In this document: one piece after another, positions 19,348 through 45,000 of the stretch | Numbering within the stretch: the first letter of the stretch is position 1 | How the letters are laid out: each line of letters opens with the position of its first letter | Source: Botryllus schlosseri | Lineage: Eukaryota | Assembly (NCBI GenBank): GCA_051294905.1 | Contig: CM119375.1 | Location: 7,130,001 to 7,194,000 of the forward strand | Direction: 5' to 3' | Length of the DNA: 64,000 bases | Notes under the pieces: generated by a model | Seen by the model: the letters and a program-made list of their open reading frames with translations, nothing else | What the model was told of the DNA's origin: nothing | Databases searched by the model: none | Position numbers and translations under genes: made by a program

Positions 19348-19731
19348 TTGACATCTCGGTATGTCCGCACGGAAATTCCTAACTCCTTAATAACGGTAAA
19401 CTCAATGGAGGAGTGTGGGTTATCATCGTGTTTAGCGACATTATTGACCTTCCGAAATAAAATGGCTGGCATTAGTCTCGATATCGTGGAAGATGCATCC
19501 TCGCTTTATTTAGAGGCGATTACGCCTCTCAATCCAGTCGACGAAGTGCGTATTATGCCGAAAAGTGTACGTCAGGTATTGCAGATCATAACGGAGCAAT
19601 GGTATAATAAGCATGTGCTTAGAATGCCTTCATTGATTGGAAAACCACTACGGTATCATTTTCTATCGGCTGTCGATGAAGATAACTGGGTTGGACGCCC
19701 GAACGCAGTGCCGACAGCACAGAAACAGTAA
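19348..19731 (+). CDS. Orphan ORF, 127 aa, unknown product (could be a terminal exon or a decayed gene)
   Basis: Longest ORF in the coding-like 17.1-19.8 kb island. TTG start, AATAAA at 19831-19836. No recognisable domain. Confidence 0.25.
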   Translation: MTSRYVRTEIPNSLITVNSMEECGLSSCLATLLTFRNKMAGISLDIVEDASSLYLEAITPLNPVDEVRIMPKSVRQVLQIITEQWYNKHVLRMPSLIGKPLRYHFLSAVDEDNWVGRPNAVPTAQKQ

Positions 19732-20258
19732 TGATCGACGCAAGATTGCGATACAACAACGCGCGATTAGCCTTGAACGATCCGTGTGAGCATGTGAGAT
19801 AATAACATGTCGAGAAAAAATAGGGACGAGAATAAATGTAGCGAAGCGTTCATGTCAAGGGAGATTACTACTTATGCCGTTTAGGTAACTGGTGATTTAG
19901 ATTTCAAGCCGCGGCCAGCGCGAAGGCGGTGCAACGAGTTCGGGCTCGGAGTAACAACCAAATTGAAGTATAAGGCTATCGATGCGGTGCAGGTGTAAGA
20001 AATGGTGTGTAGTGTGTAAGACGTTTTCGGTAAGAGTCCAACAGGTTTCGGCGTTGCGAAGCGCGCAGTGCTCATCGTGTTTCCGCGAATATGATGATAT
20101 GCTATAATCGTCTTATAACGGATAAACCCTATATGAATGTGGTGTTGTCTTTGTCACCCGTTTCAGAATAATACAGTCGTGTAGTAAAACCGCCGAGGTA
20201 AATTCAACTAAGGTACTTCACATAGATACAGGCGTTAAGTGGTAAAGAAAAAGTAATC

Positions 20259-22663
20259 ATGAGTGCTCCAACCGCCTCTATTTTGCAGTCGTCCGCTCCG
20301 GGAAGCGCAAGTGTCTTGGGAGACTATTATATTGGTAGGTTAAAATTGTTGCAGCTTTGTGAAAGGGTGAGGTTTATGATATTTCTCATTTTACGCAAGG
20401 GGTCAGTGCTCCTCTGATTACGCACCGCCATGCAACAGCGTTCATGACCAGGATGCAGCACAAGCCACCAACATTCAACTCCGGTAAGTTTAAAGTTAAA
20501 ATTTAATGGGATTTGAGCGTAGAAAGAATGCGCGTGCACGAATACTATATAATAGTTGAATTTCACTTGGAATACTCTGACGTGATGTTTGTTTATTTAA
20601 ATGTTGGCTACGATTTAGTCCACGCAGAAAATGTGTAGGTATACTGTGCGCTTTTGATATTCCTAAATATCTTTACAAAACTATTGCAGCATACTTGATC
20701 ATAGTATTTGTGATCCCATCTATATCACGGCGTGTTTATGTGTAAATGTGCGTGATGCGTAAATGTGTCGTAATGTACAATATATGTGCTAATTGCGAAG
20801 CATGGATATCGTCTGACAATCCTACGTTAATTGCAGCACACCTTGTCACATTATTAGTGAGGATTCATCACATAATATTTCAAGATATGTGTTTATGTGT
20901 TACGGGAATGTGTGCGATAGTGGACACGACTGAAGATTCCTTGTACCTTATACCATGTTTTTTGACTTGTTTTCTCTGTGATTACAGAGTCCGCTTCTCC
21001 GGAAGATGAGTCGTGCTCTACCGGCTCTTCGCCGTATCAAGCGTCTTCGTCCACATCATCGCCCGCTATGGTGTTTCCAAACTCATCACACTCAACAACT
21101 CCTCCCGCAGCGACATACTCGTCAGCGCGTTTGCTTTCAGCAAGGTATAATTTAGTTACAGACTTGGCGAGCGACTTGGCGGCTTACTGAACGGTTTTCG
21201 AATAGTCAGTTGCTAATGTCGCTTGTCTACATTTCAGTGTATACAACGGTGCGGCGGGTGGCGACAAACCTTACGAGAACTGGCACAAGCAACAATGCAG
21301 CCGAGATTCGCCAGTCGGGACGCTCGCAAACGCTACCACTGGAACGTATTCGCTTCCTTCGACAACTCCGAACTTTGTCGCGTCGACGGCGGTTTATCCG
21401 GCCGCTAATCACTGGGAAGCCGCTCTTCATGGAAACACATGGCTCGAAATGCAGCATAGCTTTCAACATCATCACAACCAGGTTGGCAAATCTTTGTCGT
21501 TGAGAATCGTGTGCGAGATAGGATAATATCCAACACACCCGCAGGTTTTAGTGTATTCCAATTACGCTAACGCGTATTCCTATCAAGCTAACGCGTAACG
21601 TACGCATTTTCAGATAGCAAATTACTCAACCGATTATTCGTTTCCCGCAAGCCAGCTGACAACACTAGGAAATCATCTATCTGCAGGTTTGTCGGTGTTT
21701 TCATTTTGGTTAGAGAAATTGCATAGCATATGCGGCAACTTGGCTTTTAGCCCAACATCCGGCGGTGTATGAAACTTTCAAGCCTGTACTGTCAGGGGCC
21801 GCCGGGACCATGTACAACGATTCAACCGCACAGCTCCCGTCTATGATATCGCCGCCCTCGATACCTGCACCCACACGGAACACTAGAAGATACTCTGGGA
21901 GGTAAATTGTTATGTTATTTTCGCGTTTCACTGTCGTGACCATGGTGTCGCGTTTCAGATCGATTTGTGAATGTCCGAACTGCCAGGAAATCGAGCGTCT
22001 CGGCCCGGCGGCGGCAAATTTCAAACCCAAAGTTCACAGCTGCCACATACCGGGATGCGGCAAGGTCTACAACAAAACATCGCATTTGAAGGCCCACTTG
22101 CGATGGCACACAGGTATACGCGCTCTATCGCAAATATTGTACCGATTAAAAAGGTTATATCGCGCTTGATGACAAAATTGGATAATTAGCCGATTTGAGC
22201 GGCGAAAAAACAAAATGGGAGATGCTCGACGAGCGGCAATCAGCGTGTGAAATGAGTTAAAGTCTCATTCTCACGTTATTAATAAAAAATTGTGGCATTT
22301 TTCAATTCGATCGGACCGTATAACCGCGGAATCGCGGTAACAAAACCTCGTCCGATCGTTGCGACTCGGAATATATTTTCTCTTGTCGGACAGACACCTG
22401 AACTAAATTAATTAACGGCTTCGTCTCGGCCAAGATGAGCGTAAGACGGATGTATCATGCAGTGGGATTTTAAATCGCTTGTTTTCTTAGGAGAAAAGCG
22501 GTTTGCATGCCCGGTGTGCAACAAACGATTTCAAAGAAGTGACCACTTGAGCAAACACGTGAAGTCGCACACCACAACACCGGAGCCGACTCCGAAAGGG
22601 AACCGTGTTAAAGTGGAACCGACTCAGAACGGCAGCATCGGCGAAGGGCTGCAACCGAAATGA
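20259..22663 (+). CDS. Sp6/7/8/9: Sp6/7/8/9-class (Sp8/9-like) C2H2 transcription factor with Btd box and only two zinc fingers, about 370 aa; 5' end uncertain
   Basis: Exons 20259-20334, 20400-20483, 20988-21144, 21238-21481, 21614-21686, 21751-21901, 21959-22113, 22491-22663, phases consistent. Sp8/9 motifs: [34 protein letters not shown] (Btd box), [53 protein letters not shown]. Confidence 0.93.
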
Positions 22664-23095
22664 TAACTTTCATCCGAGAGCGGCTGGTCGCTGAGATCTG
22701 TATTTCTCAAAAGGTCGCGTTTCAGAATGTGGATGATTTCGGAGCGACTCAACGCCAGTCCGTGTGATTAGACGTGTCGGAGTTGGGCGCTGCGTTACGT
22801 CAATCGCGGATACTACGGTACTCGGTTCTGTGCTACGTGGGAATATTGATTATTTTGTGTATGGTGTCGCGAAAAATCTACGAGTATATTCGGTACGTGA
22901 TGTGATCCCACGCCGGTATCTCGGCGCGTTTTCGCGAGCTGAAGGCGAGTGATGTTTTAATGTTTTAACAGTCATGAAGCATTGATTTGATGTCGTTGCG
23001 ATGCGGGACTATCTGTTTTATCTTATTCCGTTATTTTCCGTTCGATTTGTTACTCCGAAATCTGTGCGTTCGTACAAGTCAACATACAGTGAAAG

Positions 23096-23614
23096 TCAAA
23101 TTTTGGAATAAACTTGAACGGTGGGATTGTAACGTCGAGTATATGGCGGGGACGTTAGCGCTTGTAAGTCTACCGGATTAGTCGCGCAATATCCTTGTTT
23201 AACCCTCTTTGCGTTAAGCACGGCTAAATAATTGCGAAGATTTGCGTACACCGCACCTGATGCAAAGTCGATCCATAAGTCCAAACTACGCTCTACAGCA
23301 TTAGAGCGCAAGGTTCGCGAATTAAGGATACGAATTGAGATTGATCGCTCCAGGTCATGTTTAAGTAATTGGTAAATGCTGCGCGCTGTTGACATTAGAT
23401 TGTAATAATGATTAAATATGGGATTATTGAGCGAATGGTCATCAGTGTATTTCATAAGCAAGGTGTACAAGCTTGAGTTAAGCGGGCGCACTTTGGTTTT
23501 ACACGGACGTGTCTTAGCGGGAACGACGATGGCATTCTGGGTAAGCGTCGGTTTTGCTGCGTTTTCCCCGTGATCTAAATCGTCTTCAGTGGAGTAATTT
23601 TCCCAATTTTCCAT
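23096..23614 (-). CDS. Orphan intronless ORF, 172 aa, unknown product
   Basis: ATG start with an in-frame stop just upstream, acidic N-terminus (MENWENYSTEDDLD), convergent with the Sp 3' end. No recognisable domain. Confidence 0.4.
   Translation of the reverse strand: MENWENYSTEDDLDHGENAAKPTLTQNAIVVPAKTRPCKTKVRPLNSSLYTLLMKYTDDHSLNNPIFNHYYNLMSTARSIYQLLKHDLERSISIRILNSRTLRSNAVERSLDLWIDFASGAVYANLRNYLAVLNAKRVKQGYCATNPVDLQALTSPPYTRRYNPTVQVYSKI
23107..23112 (+). terminator. Likely polyadenylation signal of the Sp gene
   Basis: First AATAAA I found downstream of the TGA at 22663. Confidence 0.45.
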
Positions 23615-42000: not shown

Positions 42001-45000
42001 TCCTGGTAGCGACAATGGTATCAAGTAGTGTGGTCTCATTGTAAACAAAGCATTGCTTTTTTTAGTAACGGCGGGTTCATGTTCTTCACTTCACATTACC
42101 TCAGCTCGAGCACGGGCCCTGGTTTTGTCTCTGTGTGTTGCGATTATTATCAAACTTATTCCTGTAGGTTCATTCATGCGGTCTGGAGCATAAATGGGAT
42201 GTCAGACCCTGCAACACCCAACCTTGTTGTGGGCCGTTTCCCTGGTCACAATGGACTGCTTGCTCCGCTACCTGTGGCATGGTAAGTGGAATTCGCTCTG
42301 ACATCCATCGTCGCGTATCGCATGCAATGACGCCATAATAAAGCATTGGAAAATATCTCTTTACTGCAGATCGTAATACGAAATAATTATACTTGACCGT
42401 GACATGCCGACCTGCAGGCTACAAAATTAATTGCAGCGAATGTATATGAATCATAACGTTTTCATGCGAGGTAATTCTGTGGTACATTTATGCTGCAAGC
42501 ATTCAATGTACGACGATGTATAGCCGCATGAGATACACGGGTTATAGCCTTGTACCAACGTCGGAATCAGGCCTCTCATGTATACAGCGCTGCATGTTCT
42601 ACAACTACATCATCGCCTCTGACCATAATTTAATTCGGATAGAGATGGTCAAAGTAGCCAGCGTTGCTATTCAAGTAGAAGTAGAAGTAACTTCCTATCT
42701 ATCTACTCAATTACATGTAGAAGTAGCGGTTTTCAATGCCTTCTAAAACTACTTCAAGTGAAATTGTATATTGAACGGTCTGACACGTGCTCTTGTAAGT
42801 AGTTTTAAAAAGTAGATATGGTGGAGGAATAGCACGCTTTAGCAGTTACTCAGAGGTGGCTACTTTCAAAATTGTGCCTAACGCAAAAGGACTAATGCAA
42901 CTACAAATATGTGGAATCTTCAGATATATATTCAGTTGCGGTGATACAGAGGCTATTTCATGCTGTTTTTATGAATGTGCAACTCGTAAAAGTGACGAAA
43001 ACATATCTCAAAATTTCATTGAACTTTTCTAATTCCAAATTAAAAACAGTAAGTAGTTTGACTAAAAATTGTTCAAGTAGAAGTAGTTTAAAGACATCTA
43101 TAGACATAACCACTTGTAGTAAGTACCGCAAGAATAGGCAAAACCTTCTCGATTATACCGAAAAAGTAGAAGATTTCCCTACCTAATTACTTAGTTGCTT
43201 CATTTGCTGGATTTCCGTCACGTTTAGATTTATGATTAACTTCGAATGATAGCCCGCCATTACGACTTGGTTGACAAAATTTGGACATAAATATCTTTAG
43301 CAGCTCGATTCTAACATCTGTCGTGACGAAATTCCGATACAGATGTCCCTGTTCGGATATAGTTTTCAAAGCAACTTATGCCATCACTGTGTTTCGCAGG
43401 GAATCCAAGTTCGCCGAAGATCAGACGTCTGTCCCGAGTTGCCGGAAGAGGTTGTATCAATATCTTGCGACGCTGGTGAGAAACTTCTGACATTTCTCAA
43501 CGCACAGCGCCTCGCAAACGACTGTCAATTGCTGTCTAGGGCCCGGAAACTACGGCGAGTGGTCGGCGTACGAGGCGTGCTCGAAAACCTGTCCTGGCGG
43601 TAGCCACATGAGAAAGAGGTCTCATTCGTGCGGTTTGAAAGACGACGTCCAGATAGAGGCGTGCGGCTTACCGGGATTTTATTCGCAGTGGTGCGTTGAT
43701 TGCTAGTGATATTATCCAGCTGTCTGTGCTATATCGCCGGTTGCATCCACCTGCGGTATGCTACCACCAGGGCTGTGGAACCGGTTCACTTTACCACTGA
43801 CCGCAGATCCAACTCCAGATATTTTAAACACACACACCGATTCAAACTCAGACTTTGGAACACACAGCTCGGAATCTTAATATTTTCTTCACAGATCTCC
43901 GACTCCGACTTGGTGTAAATCTACTCAGAAAATTACACGTTTATTACATTTTGGTTATTATTTGTTACCAAGCTAATCAGCATTGTTTATGAATTTTGAA
44001 AATTCTGTTCGCATACCTAAATTAAGTTCTAAAAGGTGAACTATGCACCGAAAAACCTAATAACTTCAGTAACTGGGTAATACTTTAATCACATTGGAGA
44101 ACATTTCCTTCAATTATAATGTATAGCTGGAGTCGGAGTCGGAGTTTGTAAAATTACTCTGACAGCCAGTATATGTTTCGCTAAATCCGAATCCAACTCT
44201 GAAGGGTGGTACAAACATTCTGTGACTCCGCCACCACTCCTATTTCACTCCATATCTCTATTAACGAACTTTTCTAAAATGAGATTCGTCGATCGAAGTT
44301 TTAAGGTCGGATCCGTTCCATGTGAATCTGGCTTAGCGACTTGTGACGATTTCGAGTCCATCATATACAATCTCGTTTCTAGAAATTCACTCAATTCATT
44401 GCCACCTGGCTCGCTCAAATTTCAGGACGGATTGGACCACATGTTCAAAAACATGCCCCGGCGGTACCACGTTCCGATCTCGCACGCACAGCTGCCAGGA
44501 ACCCGAATACGAAACACAAGAATGCGGTTTGGAAGGCGCCTGGTCCAACTGGCAGGCTTGGTCTACCTGCTCAAAAACCTGTCCCGGGGGACAGAAATTT
44601 CGTGTGCGCTTTCACAGTTGCACGAATGAGCAAGACCTCGAAACTGTCGAATGCGGGGAAGTTGGTAAGATTCAATCATTCGTCAGGCTAGAAATATCTT
44701 GTTTTGATCACGAACTCTTTCCATTTGCAGGCGGATTCAGCGGATGGGGTCTATGGTCAGCATGCAGCCAATCATGCTTAGGCGGATTTCGAAATCGCGT
44801 TCGTTATCAAGTCTGTACTGCGGCTAGTGACGTGAGTAGGCATCTGATTAAATATAGGATCAAAGGCTGACTCTATGACGAATGCAGGACGAAACTGAAT
44901 CGTGTGGCAGCCCGGGAGCGTGGGGAGTATACCCCGATTGGAGCGTGTGTACGAAGCAATGCGGCGGCGGCGAGCAGTTCCGCACGCGGGTCCATTCATG

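What the first reader, a model, noticed from the sequence alone, without database searches (positions are those of the whole stretch)
21959..22663. Sp8/9-like transcription factor that has precisely lost zinc finger 2
Seen: ZF1 ends HLRWHTG with a phase-1 intron at 22114, and the next exon (22491) starts with [23 protein letters not shown]. The 377-nt intron between them contains no C-x4-C...RSDELQRH sequence in any frame I could read. Established: Sp/KLF proteins have three fingers, and in Sp8/9 the linkers are TGERPF (ZF1-2) and TGEKRF (ZF2-3), so this exon is ZF3. ZF2 and ZF3 dominate GC-box binding. Inference: a symmetric phase-1 ZF2 exon was deleted cleanly, leaving an in-frame two-finger protein. 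The near-invariant KVYGKTSH and FMRSDH are also changed ([14 protein letters not shown]). The protein could bind a new shorter site, or act mainly through partners as Sp7 does with Dlx.
Basis: partly seen in the sequence, partly recalled or inferred. Interest (0 to 1): 0.85.

Follow-up and report, generated by a model that had tools for sequence, protein, structure and literature searches.

The report
Two-finger Sp8/9 gene of sea squirts
This sea-squirt gene is the counterpart of vertebrate Sp8/Sp9 and really makes a protein with two instead of three DNA-reading zinc fingers, but the missing finger is an old trait shared by all sea squirts examined, including the well-studied Ciona gene Sp6/7/8/9, not a change peculiar to this genome.

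Summary
Exon 7 (21959-22113) encodes the Btd box and finger 1. Exon 8 (22491-22663) encodes finger 3. The 377-nt GT..AG phase-1 intron between them holds no finger 2, and neither does the rest of the window. Three RNA data sets show the 22113>22491 splice, and DNA contigs from a second source cover the intron, so it is not an assembly error.

The gene has 8 exons, encodes 370 aa and is single-copy. In a tree it groups with Sp8/Sp9.

Styela, both Ciona species, Phallusia, Clavelina, four transcript-derived relatives and a second, unnamed marine clade all share the same 30-residue gap. The genomic loci I could check also share the intron position.

The Ciona orthologue is the published Zf220 = Sp6/7/8(/9) gene, which has knock-down, knock-out and rescue phenotypes. 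Both remaining fingers are almost invariant while synonymous sites are saturated.

Amphioxus encodes all three fingers in one exon, so "clean loss of a finger-2 exon" is one of three possible routes.

None of the papers I could search mentions the missing finger. How the protein binds DNA is untested.

The parts
20259..20334 (+). Coding exon 1 (ATG at 20259; the 5'UTR extends upstream to about 20080 or further). The N-terminus [10 protein letters not shown]... is conserved in all ascidian orthologues.
   Evidence: RNA joint 20334>20400 in X7, X12 and X24; translation; orthologue N-termini
20400..20483 (+).
   Evidence: RNA joints 20334>20400 and 20483>20988
20988..21144 (+). Coding exon 3 (Ser/Thr/Pro-rich)
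   Evidence: RNA joints; open frame
21238..21481 (+). Coding exon 4 (contains the PYENWH and WEAALHG...WLEMQ motifs shared with Sp8/9-type proteins); single copy in the genome
   Evidence: RNA joints; own-genome search finds only this locus
21614..21686 (+). Coding exon 5
   Evidence: RNA joints
21751..21901 (+). Coding exon 6 (YETFKPVL ... RRYSG, as in Sp8/9)
   Evidence: RNA joints; alignment A1
21959..22113 (+). Coding exon 7: Btd box CECPNC (21966-21983) and zinc finger 1 (22041-22109); ends in phase 1 inside the Gly codon of the HTG linker
   Evidence: Pfam zf-C2H2 at 23.7 bits, just under the 25.2-bit curated cutoff; RNA joint
22114..22490 (+). Intron 7, 377 nt, GT..AG, at the exact place where finger 2 would be; no trace of finger 2 remains
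   Evidence: Six-frame translation; tblastn with amphioxus finger 2; RNA depth about 0 and DNA contigs of X5 across it; intron at the same site and phase in Ciona (424 nt), Clavelina (74), Styela (1037) and L014 (881)
22491..22663 (+). Coding part of exon 8: linker (G)EKRF, zinc finger 3 (22508-22570, [10 protein letters not shown]), a 29-residue tail with VKVEP (22607-22621), stop at 22661-22663
   Evidence: Pfam zf-C2H2 27.1 bits
22664..23129 (+). 3'UTR (RNA contig of X7 runs to 23129; X24 read depth continues into the 23029-23155 depth bin)
   Evidence: tables 2 and 8

Best explanation
This is the single Sp6-9 (Sp8/Sp9-type) transcription-factor gene of an ascidian. It is intact, spliced and expressed. 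Its DNA-binding domain has only fingers 1 and 3, joined directly by the normal TGEKRF linker. Finger 2 was lost once, before the ascidian orders diverged and probably earlier in tunicates. The two-finger domain has since been kept almost unchanged by selection. Its Ciona orthologue is the known developmental regulator Zf220 = Sp6/7/8(/9). SHOWN: the gene model, the splice, expression, single copy, orthology, the exact 30-residue gap, the shared intron site, purifying selection, and identity with the published Ciona gene. INFERRED, about 50% likely: fingers 1 and 3 form an ordinary tandem pair that can read only about six G-rich base pairs (finger 3 RSDHLSK would read GGG; finger 1 KTSHLKA would read a weakly specified GG-type triplet). 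That falls short of the 9-bp GC box, whose central GCG is read by finger 2. Target choice would then depend largely on partner factors bound nearby, such as Islet or other homeodomain proteins in the Ciona papillae. ORIGIN, inferred: the intron sits exactly on the scar. In the unnamed sister clade it is the only intron seen in the part of the coding sequence held (residues 1-335 and the finger-1 junction). This ties the intron to the loss.
For: The gene model of 8 exons and 370 aa comes from RNA joints at all 7 introns in X7, X12 and X24. There is no finger 2 in the intron, the window or any orphan locus in the genome. The only other Sp-type finger 2 belongs to a complete three-finger Sp5-like gene 6.2 Mb away. 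Exon 4 and the amphioxus Sp9 N-terminal region match only this locus in the 495-Mb genome. After the ascidian orthologues (and one poly-finger flatworm protein labelled Sp9), the named hits are almost all Sp8/Sp9. In the tree, the two-finger proteins form one clade (support 98/99) next to vertebrate Sp8+Sp9 (82/81). The alignment shows one clean 30-column gap, with fingers 1 and 3 otherwise invariant. Among 258 Sp6-9-type proteins with a Btd box and finger 1, 207 have three fingers, 41 are truncated or mispredicted, and the 10 with two fingers all fall in this clade. Over the 52 finger codons, synonymous differences are saturated (pS 0.65-1.1) while pN is 0-0.055 among ascidians; window versus P0002 shows 30 synonymous and 0 non-synonymous differences. 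Within the species there are 10 synonymous and 3 non-synonymous SNPs, and the only one in a finger is synonymous. The intron lies at the same site and phase in 5 genomes plus L029. Amphioxus has the Btd box and three fingers in one exon, and its two linkers share the 13-nt repeat CACACCGGGGAGA 90 nt apart. The published Zf220 morpholino reverse-complements to a sequence encoding MSAQTSSL, the start of the Ciona protein P0163. Ciona function: the knock-down expands Foxg (PMC6820760); a CRISPR knock-out loses collocyte fates, is rescued by cDNA, and the gene acts combinatorially with Islet (PMC10962819).
Against: No DNA-binding data for any two-finger Sp protein were found, so the binding mode is inference from the general zinc-finger recognition code and from my knowledge of Sp1. 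X7 and X12 are only guessed to be RNA runs, although their spliced contigs and the recorded RNA run X24 agree. The unnamed clade could not be assigned to a taxon, so 'tunicate-wide' is not proven. Its long branch could be drawn artificially towards the ascidians. Recent Ciona work reports that overexpression does not repress a Foxg reporter and that the knock-out phenotype is complex (PMC13671656), so even the regulatory sign of the factor is unsettled. The three origin scenarios cannot be separated with present data.
Confidence: 0.85

Rival explanations
1. One reading: a recent, lineage-specific clean deletion of a symmetric phase-1 finger-2 exon in this genome, producing a novel two-finger protein.
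For: The junction is in phase 1 and in frame, and an intron lies exactly at the scar.
Against: The same gap and the same intron site occur in Styela, Ciona, Clavelina and L014. The same gap is seen in the Phallusia and C. savignyi proteins and in a divergent unnamed clade. Ciona and Phallusia alone are cited as 275 My apart. Amphioxus has no introns around finger 2. An ancient exon loss in the tunicate stem remains possible; I give that route about 25%.
Confidence: 0.03
2. Artefact: a collapsed assembly, a pseudogene, or one alternative isoform of a three-finger gene whose finger-2 exon lies elsewhere.
For: None beyond the prior expectation that Sp proteins have three fingers.
Against: DNA contigs from another sample cover the intron. 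Spliced RNA from three studies joins 22113 directly to 22491 with no competing joint. The ORF is intact. Selection is strong. Four other genome assemblies show the same structure. There is no orphan Sp-type finger 2 in the genome.
Confidence: 0.02
3. Functional rival: the two-finger protein no longer binds DNA on its own in any useful way. It works purely as a cofactor tethered by other factors (the Sp7/Osterix-Dlx mode), and the fingers are kept as a protein-protein interface.
For: Finger 2 reads the core of the GC box (my knowledge of Sp1). Sp7, Sp8 and Sp6 are reported to occupy AT-rich homeodomain sites through Dlx proteins (PMC9143072). Ciona Sp6/7/8 acts combinatorially with the homeodomain factor Islet (PMC10962819).
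Against: All base-contacting residues of both fingers (KTSHLKA, RSDHLSK) and the canonical linker are invariant across hundreds of millions of years. That is what selection for direct DNA contact would produce. Two-finger C2H2 proteins such as Tramtrack and ADR1 bind DNA specifically (my knowledge).
Confidence: 0.3
4. Functional rival: the two-finger domain, perhaps helped by the Btd box or basic flanks, binds a new well-defined site with high affinity by itself, so no partner is needed.
For: The Q at position -2 of finger 3 occurs only in the nine ascidian two-finger proteins sampled. The Btd-to-finger-1 spacer has a clade-specific FKPKVH / VKPRLH motif. These could be compensatory contacts.
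Against: The unnamed two-finger clade keeps M, not Q. Six base pairs give little specificity in a genome of hundreds of megabases. There are no binding data.
Confidence: 0.2

Closest known systems
Ciona Zf220 = Sp6/7/8(/9) (KH.C13.22), and its annotated orthologues in Styela clava (LOC120339978, 'Sp8-like'), Phallusia mammillata ('ZF(C2H2)-2'), Clavelina lepadiformis and Ciona savignyi
   Same: It is the same gene by descent. It shares the 8-exon structure (mapped in full in Ciona), identical finger 1 and finger 3 sequences, the same 30-residue gap and the same intron site. The Ciona gene has published expression and loss- and gain-of-function data.
   Different: Only species-level divergence: 75% identity to the nearest transcript-derived relative and lower identity to Ciona, with a different C-terminal tail (VKVEP versus D[IV]KPK). 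The papers I could read do not mention that the protein has two fingers.
Vertebrate Sp8/Sp9 and amphioxus or protostome Sp6-9 (Sp9-like)
   Same: They share the Btd box CxCPNCQE.ERLGPA, the RRYSGR lead-in, N-terminal motifs (PYE.W, FKPVL), and fingers 1 and 3 nearly residue for residue. In the tree this clade sits next to vertebrate Sp8+Sp9.
   Different: They have three fingers (an 81-residue domain) encoded without introns in one exon (amphioxus). Here finger 2 is missing, an intron lies at the scar, and M is replaced by Q before RSDHL in finger 3.
Sp7/Osterix (vertebrates)
   Same: It is an Sp6-9-class protein that has departed from GC-box binding and works with homeodomain (Dlx) partners (PMC9143072). 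It is a possible functional analogue.
   Different: Sp7 keeps three fingers and differs by point substitutions in the recognition helices. Here the helices are unchanged and a whole finger is gone. That review says ascidians lack Sp7-like variants.
Natural two-finger C2H2 DNA-binding proteins (Drosophila Tramtrack, yeast ADR1) - from my own knowledge
   Same: They have two tandem classical fingers joined by a short linker as the whole DNA-binding domain.
   Different: They are unrelated in descent. Their recognition helices differ, and they use extra flanking contacts that have not been shown here.

Membership tests
Sp family, Sp6-9 class (by descent) | Groups with Sp6-9 proteins in a tree and by best hits | tested here: met
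   After the ascidian orthologues (and one poly-finger flatworm protein labelled Sp9), the named hits are almost all Sp8/Sp9. The clade sits next to vertebrate Sp8+Sp9 with support 82/81. No Sp5 or Sp1-4 reference proteins were in the tree, so that support is moderate.
Sp family | Btd box (CxCPxC) just upstream of finger 1 | tested here: met
   CECPNC at 21966-21983; conserved in alignment A1
Sp family | Three consecutive C2H2 fingers (81-residue Sp/KLF DNA-binding domain) | tested here: not met
   There are only two fingers, and the 30 residues of finger 2 are absent. By the structural definition it is therefore not a canonical Sp protein, although it is the Sp6-9 orthologue by descent.
Sp family | Sp box (SPLALLAA-type motif) near the N-terminus | tested here: inconclusive
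   There is no match to PL[AS][LM]LA in the window. The conserved ascidian N-terminus MSAPTAS(I/L)LQ could be a degenerate Sp box, but this was not tested.
Sp6-9 class | Class-specific residues in finger 3 ([17 protein letters not shown]) and N-terminal motifs shared with Sp8/9 | tested here: met
   Alignment A1. The Sp5-like paralogue L006 instead has GKSF in finger 2 and ICDKKF in finger 3. Assigning those residues to classes rests on my own knowledge.
Functional, selected gene (not a pseudogene) | Intact ORF, spliced mRNA, and an excess of synonymous over non-synonymous change | tested here: met
GC-box-binding factor (works like Sp1/Sp8) | Binds the 9-bp GC/GT box through three fingers | not testable with these tools
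   It lacks the finger that reads the central triplet. No SELEX, PBM or ChIP data were found.
Sp7-like partner-dependent factor | Recruitment to AT-rich sites through Dlx or other homeodomain partners | not tested
   Only circumstantial: combinatorial action with Islet in Ciona

The most novel reading that the evidence does not exclude
In the tunicate stem, the Sp6-9 orthologue was converted in one step into a two-finger protein, because the coding stretch for finger 2 became an intron. This permanently changed how the factor finds its targets: a 6-bp half-site plus obligatory homeodomain partners. It would parallel, by a different route, the vertebrate Sp7 departure from GC-box binding. Motif-based models of tunicate gene networks that use vertebrate SP8/9 matrices would then be wrong for this factor.
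Probability: 0.3. Interest if true: 0.7.

Novelty: new variant of a known kind. Interest (0 to 1): 0.5.

Why it matters
The three-finger, 81-residue domain is treated as the defining and invariant feature of Sp/KLF proteins. Here a whole animal group, the sister group of vertebrates, has kept its only Sp8/9-type factor with the central finger removed, for hundreds of millions of years and under tight constraint. In Ciona this protein has clear developmental roles. That makes it a natural experiment on how much of Sp8/9 function needs GC-box reading and how much needs partner proteins. It is directly testable in a tractable model. It also has a practical side: predicting targets of Ciona Sp6/7/8/9 with vertebrate SP8/9 motifs is probably unsound. 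For this genome scan the finding is ordinary in one sense. It is the normal ascidian state of a known gene, not a peculiarity of this assembly.

Tried and rejected
1. I looked for finger 2 in the intron (six frames), in the whole window, in the introns of four other species (tblastn at E up to 1000) and as an orphan exon in the genome. I found none, and there was no cross-species intron similarity.

2. I looked for a second Sp6-9 paralogue with exon 4 and with the amphioxus Sp9 N-terminal region. Only this locus matched.

3. Other Btd-box loci: L006 is a complete three-finger Sp5-like gene. L009 is a three-finger gene in one ORF. I could not classify them rigorously because no named Sp5 or Sp1-4 reference sequences were retrieved, so their position in the tree is not meaningful.

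4. I tried to name the unnamed two-finger clade (P0077, P0052, P0276-P0281) through cluster members and a second homologue search. All come from metagenomes or unnamed runs and carry no names.

5. Literature: searches for Sp6/7/8, Zf220, KH.C13.22, SELEX, buttonhead and 'two zinc fingers' found functional papers but no statement on finger number and no binding data. Hojo et al. 2016 (PMC4964983) is not held. Slashed gene names cannot be searched, so absence from the literature is not proven.

6. A full-length homologue search with the window protein itself was not possible without typing the spliced sequence. I used exon 7 by reference and then protein ids from the hits.

7. I ran no structure prediction and no complex prediction with Dlx or Islet, because the report does not claim a specific binding pair.
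Full report
**What is in the sequence.**
Positions 21959-22113 encode ...[51 protein letters not shown] plus the first base of a Gly codon, followed by the donor GTATAC. After the acceptor TTTTCTTAG, position 22491 continues GA GAA AAG..., giving (G)[26 protein letters not shown] and a 29-residue tail, with the stop at 22661-22663.

The 377-nt intron has no finger-like reading in any of six frames. A motif scan of the whole 64-kb window finds only these two C2H2 fingers and one Btd box in a coding context. Pfam recognises both pieces as classical C2H2 fingers. Together they align as an ordinary tandem pair to solved multi-finger proteins.

**Is it real?**
I laid four public runs on 19600-23400.
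- The joint 22113>22491 (skips 377, GT..AG) is present in assembled contigs of two runs from different studies: X7 at depth 31 and X12 at depth 68.
- It is also present in raw reads of a run recorded as RNA-seq (X24: 5 reads, 3 start points).
- RNA depth in the intron is essentially nil, and no competing joint leaves 22113 or enters 22491.
- DNA contigs of X5, which carries a different organism and sample label, cover 21805-22116 and 22118-22475 with at most one difference each. This excludes a collapsed assembly.

The resulting model has 8 coding exons, 1113 nt and 370 aa, with GT..AG at every intron and an intact frame. Runs from at least five studies hold the exonic part of the locus.

**What gene is it?**
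- A library-wide phmmer search with exon 7 and a homologue search with the best full-length hit retrieved orthologues from Styela clava ('Sp8-like'), Ciona intestinalis ('zinc finger protein'), C. savignyi, Phallusia mammillata ('ZF(C2H2)-2') and Clavelina lepadiformis. They also retrieved four transcript-derived relatives from unnamed runs.
- After these (and one poly-finger flatworm protein labelled Sp9), the named hits are almost all Sp8 or Sp9 proteins of vertebrates, amphioxus and protostomes.
- The N-terminal motifs (PYE.W, FKPVL, RRYSGR before the Btd box) match those proteins.
- In a maximum-likelihood tree the two-finger proteins form one clade (98/99) that sits next to vertebrate Sp8+Sp9 (82/81). 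That is the position expected for tunicates.
- In the 495-Mb genome, exon 4 and the amphioxus Sp9 N-terminal region match only this locus, so there is no second Sp6-9 gene.

Two other Btd-box genes exist.
- One is a complete three-finger Sp5-like gene 6.2 Mb away on the same chromosome. It has introns inside fingers 1 and 3.
- The other is a three-finger gene in a single ORF on another chromosome.

This fits the three-gene Sp set proposed as ancestral for Metazoa (PMC3087555), although I could not classify the two paralogues rigorously.

**The loss is old and shared.**
Every ascidian orthologue reads ...[14 protein letters not shown](V/I)C(N/S)[15 protein letters not shown]. Alignment against amphioxus, vertebrate and protostome proteins shows one clean gap of exactly 30 columns, [30 protein letters not shown], with fingers 1 and 3 otherwise invariant. 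Because HTGE is repeated, the exact breakpoints inside the linker cannot be fixed.

The genomic loci of Ciona, Clavelina, Styela and an unnamed 1.2-Mb contig (L014) all carry an intron at the same base of the same Gly codon: TGG CAY ACA G|GT ... YAG|Gn GAR AAR. Intron lengths are 424, 74, 1037 and 881 nt, against 377 nt here. The introns share no sequence and hold no relic of finger 2.

A second, more divergent group of proteins comes from marine metagenomes and one transcriptome run (P0077, P0052, P0276-P0281).
- It has the same architecture in its two spliced representatives (...[35 protein letters not shown]) and the same intron site in genomic contigs.
- In the tree it is sister to all ascidians.
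- Its organisms are unnamed. Pelagic tunicates are my guess, not a result.

Among 258 sampled proteins with a Btd box and an Sp6-9-type finger 1, 207 have three fingers and 41 are truncated or mispredicted. The 10 with two fingers all belong to these two groups.

**Selection.**
Over the 52 finger codons, synonymous differences between species are saturated (pS 0.65-1.1). Non-synonymous differences are 0-0.055 among ascidians. Window versus P0002 shows 30 synonymous and 0 non-synonymous differences.

Within the window's species, the coding variants listed by the read-laying tool are 10 synonymous and 3 non-synonymous. The only variant in a finger is synonymous.

**It is a known gene.**
The translation-blocking morpholino published for Ciona Zf220 (CG.KH2012.C13.22) reverse-complements to ATGAGTGCTCAAACGTCGTCTTTAT. 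This encodes MSAQTSSL, the N-terminus of the Ciona protein retrieved here. Zf220 is the gene now called Sp6/7/8 or Sp6/7/8/9, also known as Btd or SP8.

Published work on it shows:
- expression in the palp territory;
- expansion of Foxg after knock-down, and repression after overexpression (PMC6820760);
- loss of collocyte fates after tissue-specific CRISPR, with cDNA rescue and combinatorial action with Islet (PMC10962819);
- a more complicated picture in a 2026 study (PMC13671656).

Two of these papers contain no occurrence of 'zinc finger' at all. None of my ten library searches found a statement that the protein has two fingers, and none found DNA-binding data. The library is incomplete and Hojo et al. 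2016 was not available. The feature is therefore apparently unremarked, but this is not proven.

**How the loss happened.**
In amphioxus the Sp9-like gene has one small 5' exon and one large exon that holds the Btd box and all three fingers. The ascidian introns are therefore gains.

Two other observations bear on this.
- The amphioxus linkers share a 13-nt direct repeat exactly 90 nt apart, CACACCGGGGAGA. This is the kind of repeat that favours a precise 90-bp deletion.
- The linker codons ACA GGN GAR resemble both an exon end (ACAG|G) and, with GGT, a donor site. The finger-2 stretch could therefore have become an intron in one step, leaving exactly the phase-1 junction seen.

In the unnamed sister clade the first 335 residues are one uninterrupted ORF, and the only intron seen in the contig is the one at the scar. 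This ties the intron to the loss rather than to the later wave of ascidian intron gains. I therefore rank the routes as follows, all by inference: conversion into an intron about 45%, deletion plus later intron gain about 30%, exon loss about 25%.

**How it probably works.**
What remains is a standard two-finger unit with a canonical linker and unchanged recognition helices. By the usual recognition rules, and by what is known for Sp1 (my knowledge), finger 3 (RSDHLSK) reads GGG, finger 1 (KTSHLKA) reads a loosely specified GG-type triplet, and the missing finger 2 reads the central GCG of the GC box.

I infer a short G-rich site of about 6 bp, with low affinity and low specificity on its own. 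Target choice would then lean on neighbouring factors. This is consistent with the Islet + Sp6/7/8 combinatorial logic in Ciona and with the Dlx-tethered mode reported for Sp7, Sp8 and Sp6.

The strict conservation of base-contact residues argues that direct DNA contact still matters. I put this reading at about 50%, a purely tethered cofactor at about 30%, and a self-sufficient new site at about 20%.

- N before KTSH is common in three-finger arthropod proteins, so it is not linked to the loss.
- Q before RSDHL occurs only in the nine ascidian two-finger proteins sampled. The unnamed clade keeps M.

**Verdict.**
It is the normal state of the ascidian Sp6-9 gene, whose Ciona orthologue is already a studied regulator. 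It is not a novelty of this genome. What may be new is the recognition that this regulator lacks the central finger that defines GC-box reading. That is moderately surprising for the Sp/KLF field and easy to test.

Noticed in passing
window 22607-22621: The C-terminal tail contains VKVEP, which fits the psi-K-x-E SUMOylation consensus (my knowledge). It is conserved in the stolidobranch-type orthologues (P0002, P0003, P0161, P0162). Ciona, Phallusia and Clavelina instead share D(I/V)KPK(I/L) near the C-terminus.
   Followed up: no
window 21260; also 22700-23050: One RNA contig (X7) carries an in-frame 6-nt insertion (GCGCCA) after 21260. The 3'UTR shows many SNPs and small indels between runs. 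This points to very high heterozygosity, as is usual for ascidians.
   Followed up: no
window 44343-44870 (+): A 175-aa open frame with three thrombospondin type-1 repeats (Pfam TSP_1, E 1.7e-13). It is probably one exon of a neighbouring gene. Otherwise the 64-kb window has almost no long ORFs, so the Sp gene lies in a gene-poor stretch.
   Followed up: partly
L034/L035 = G000:C5:13345019-13347400: The Sp5-like paralogue on the same chromosome has its three fingers split by introns inside finger 1 (SHLK|AHIRW) and inside finger 3 (FQCP|ICDKKF). Its finger-1/2 linker reads HLGERPF instead of HTGERPF.
   Followed up: partly
P0279, P0281 (unnamed marine clade): Two predicted products end just after finger 1 (…HLRWHSGERYSKKK…stop). 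This is either read-through into the intron at the scar or a one-finger isoform.
   Followed up: no
L032 4054-4170 (amphioxus Sp9-like): The two inter-finger linkers are encoded by an identical 13-nt stretch (CACACCGGGGAGA) exactly 90 nt apart. This direct repeat could mediate a precise deletion of finger 2.
   Followed up: partly
window 23096-23614 (-): A 172-aa ORF on the opposite strand, just beyond the 3'UTR and overlapping its end. It has no Pfam match and no RNA coverage beyond about 23155 in the runs laid.
   Followed up: partly
P0001 (Macrostomum lignano 'Sp9', 305 aa): The top-scoring hit of the exon-7 search matched the query in 7 separate stretches. It appears to be a poly-finger protein labelled Sp9.
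   Followed up: no
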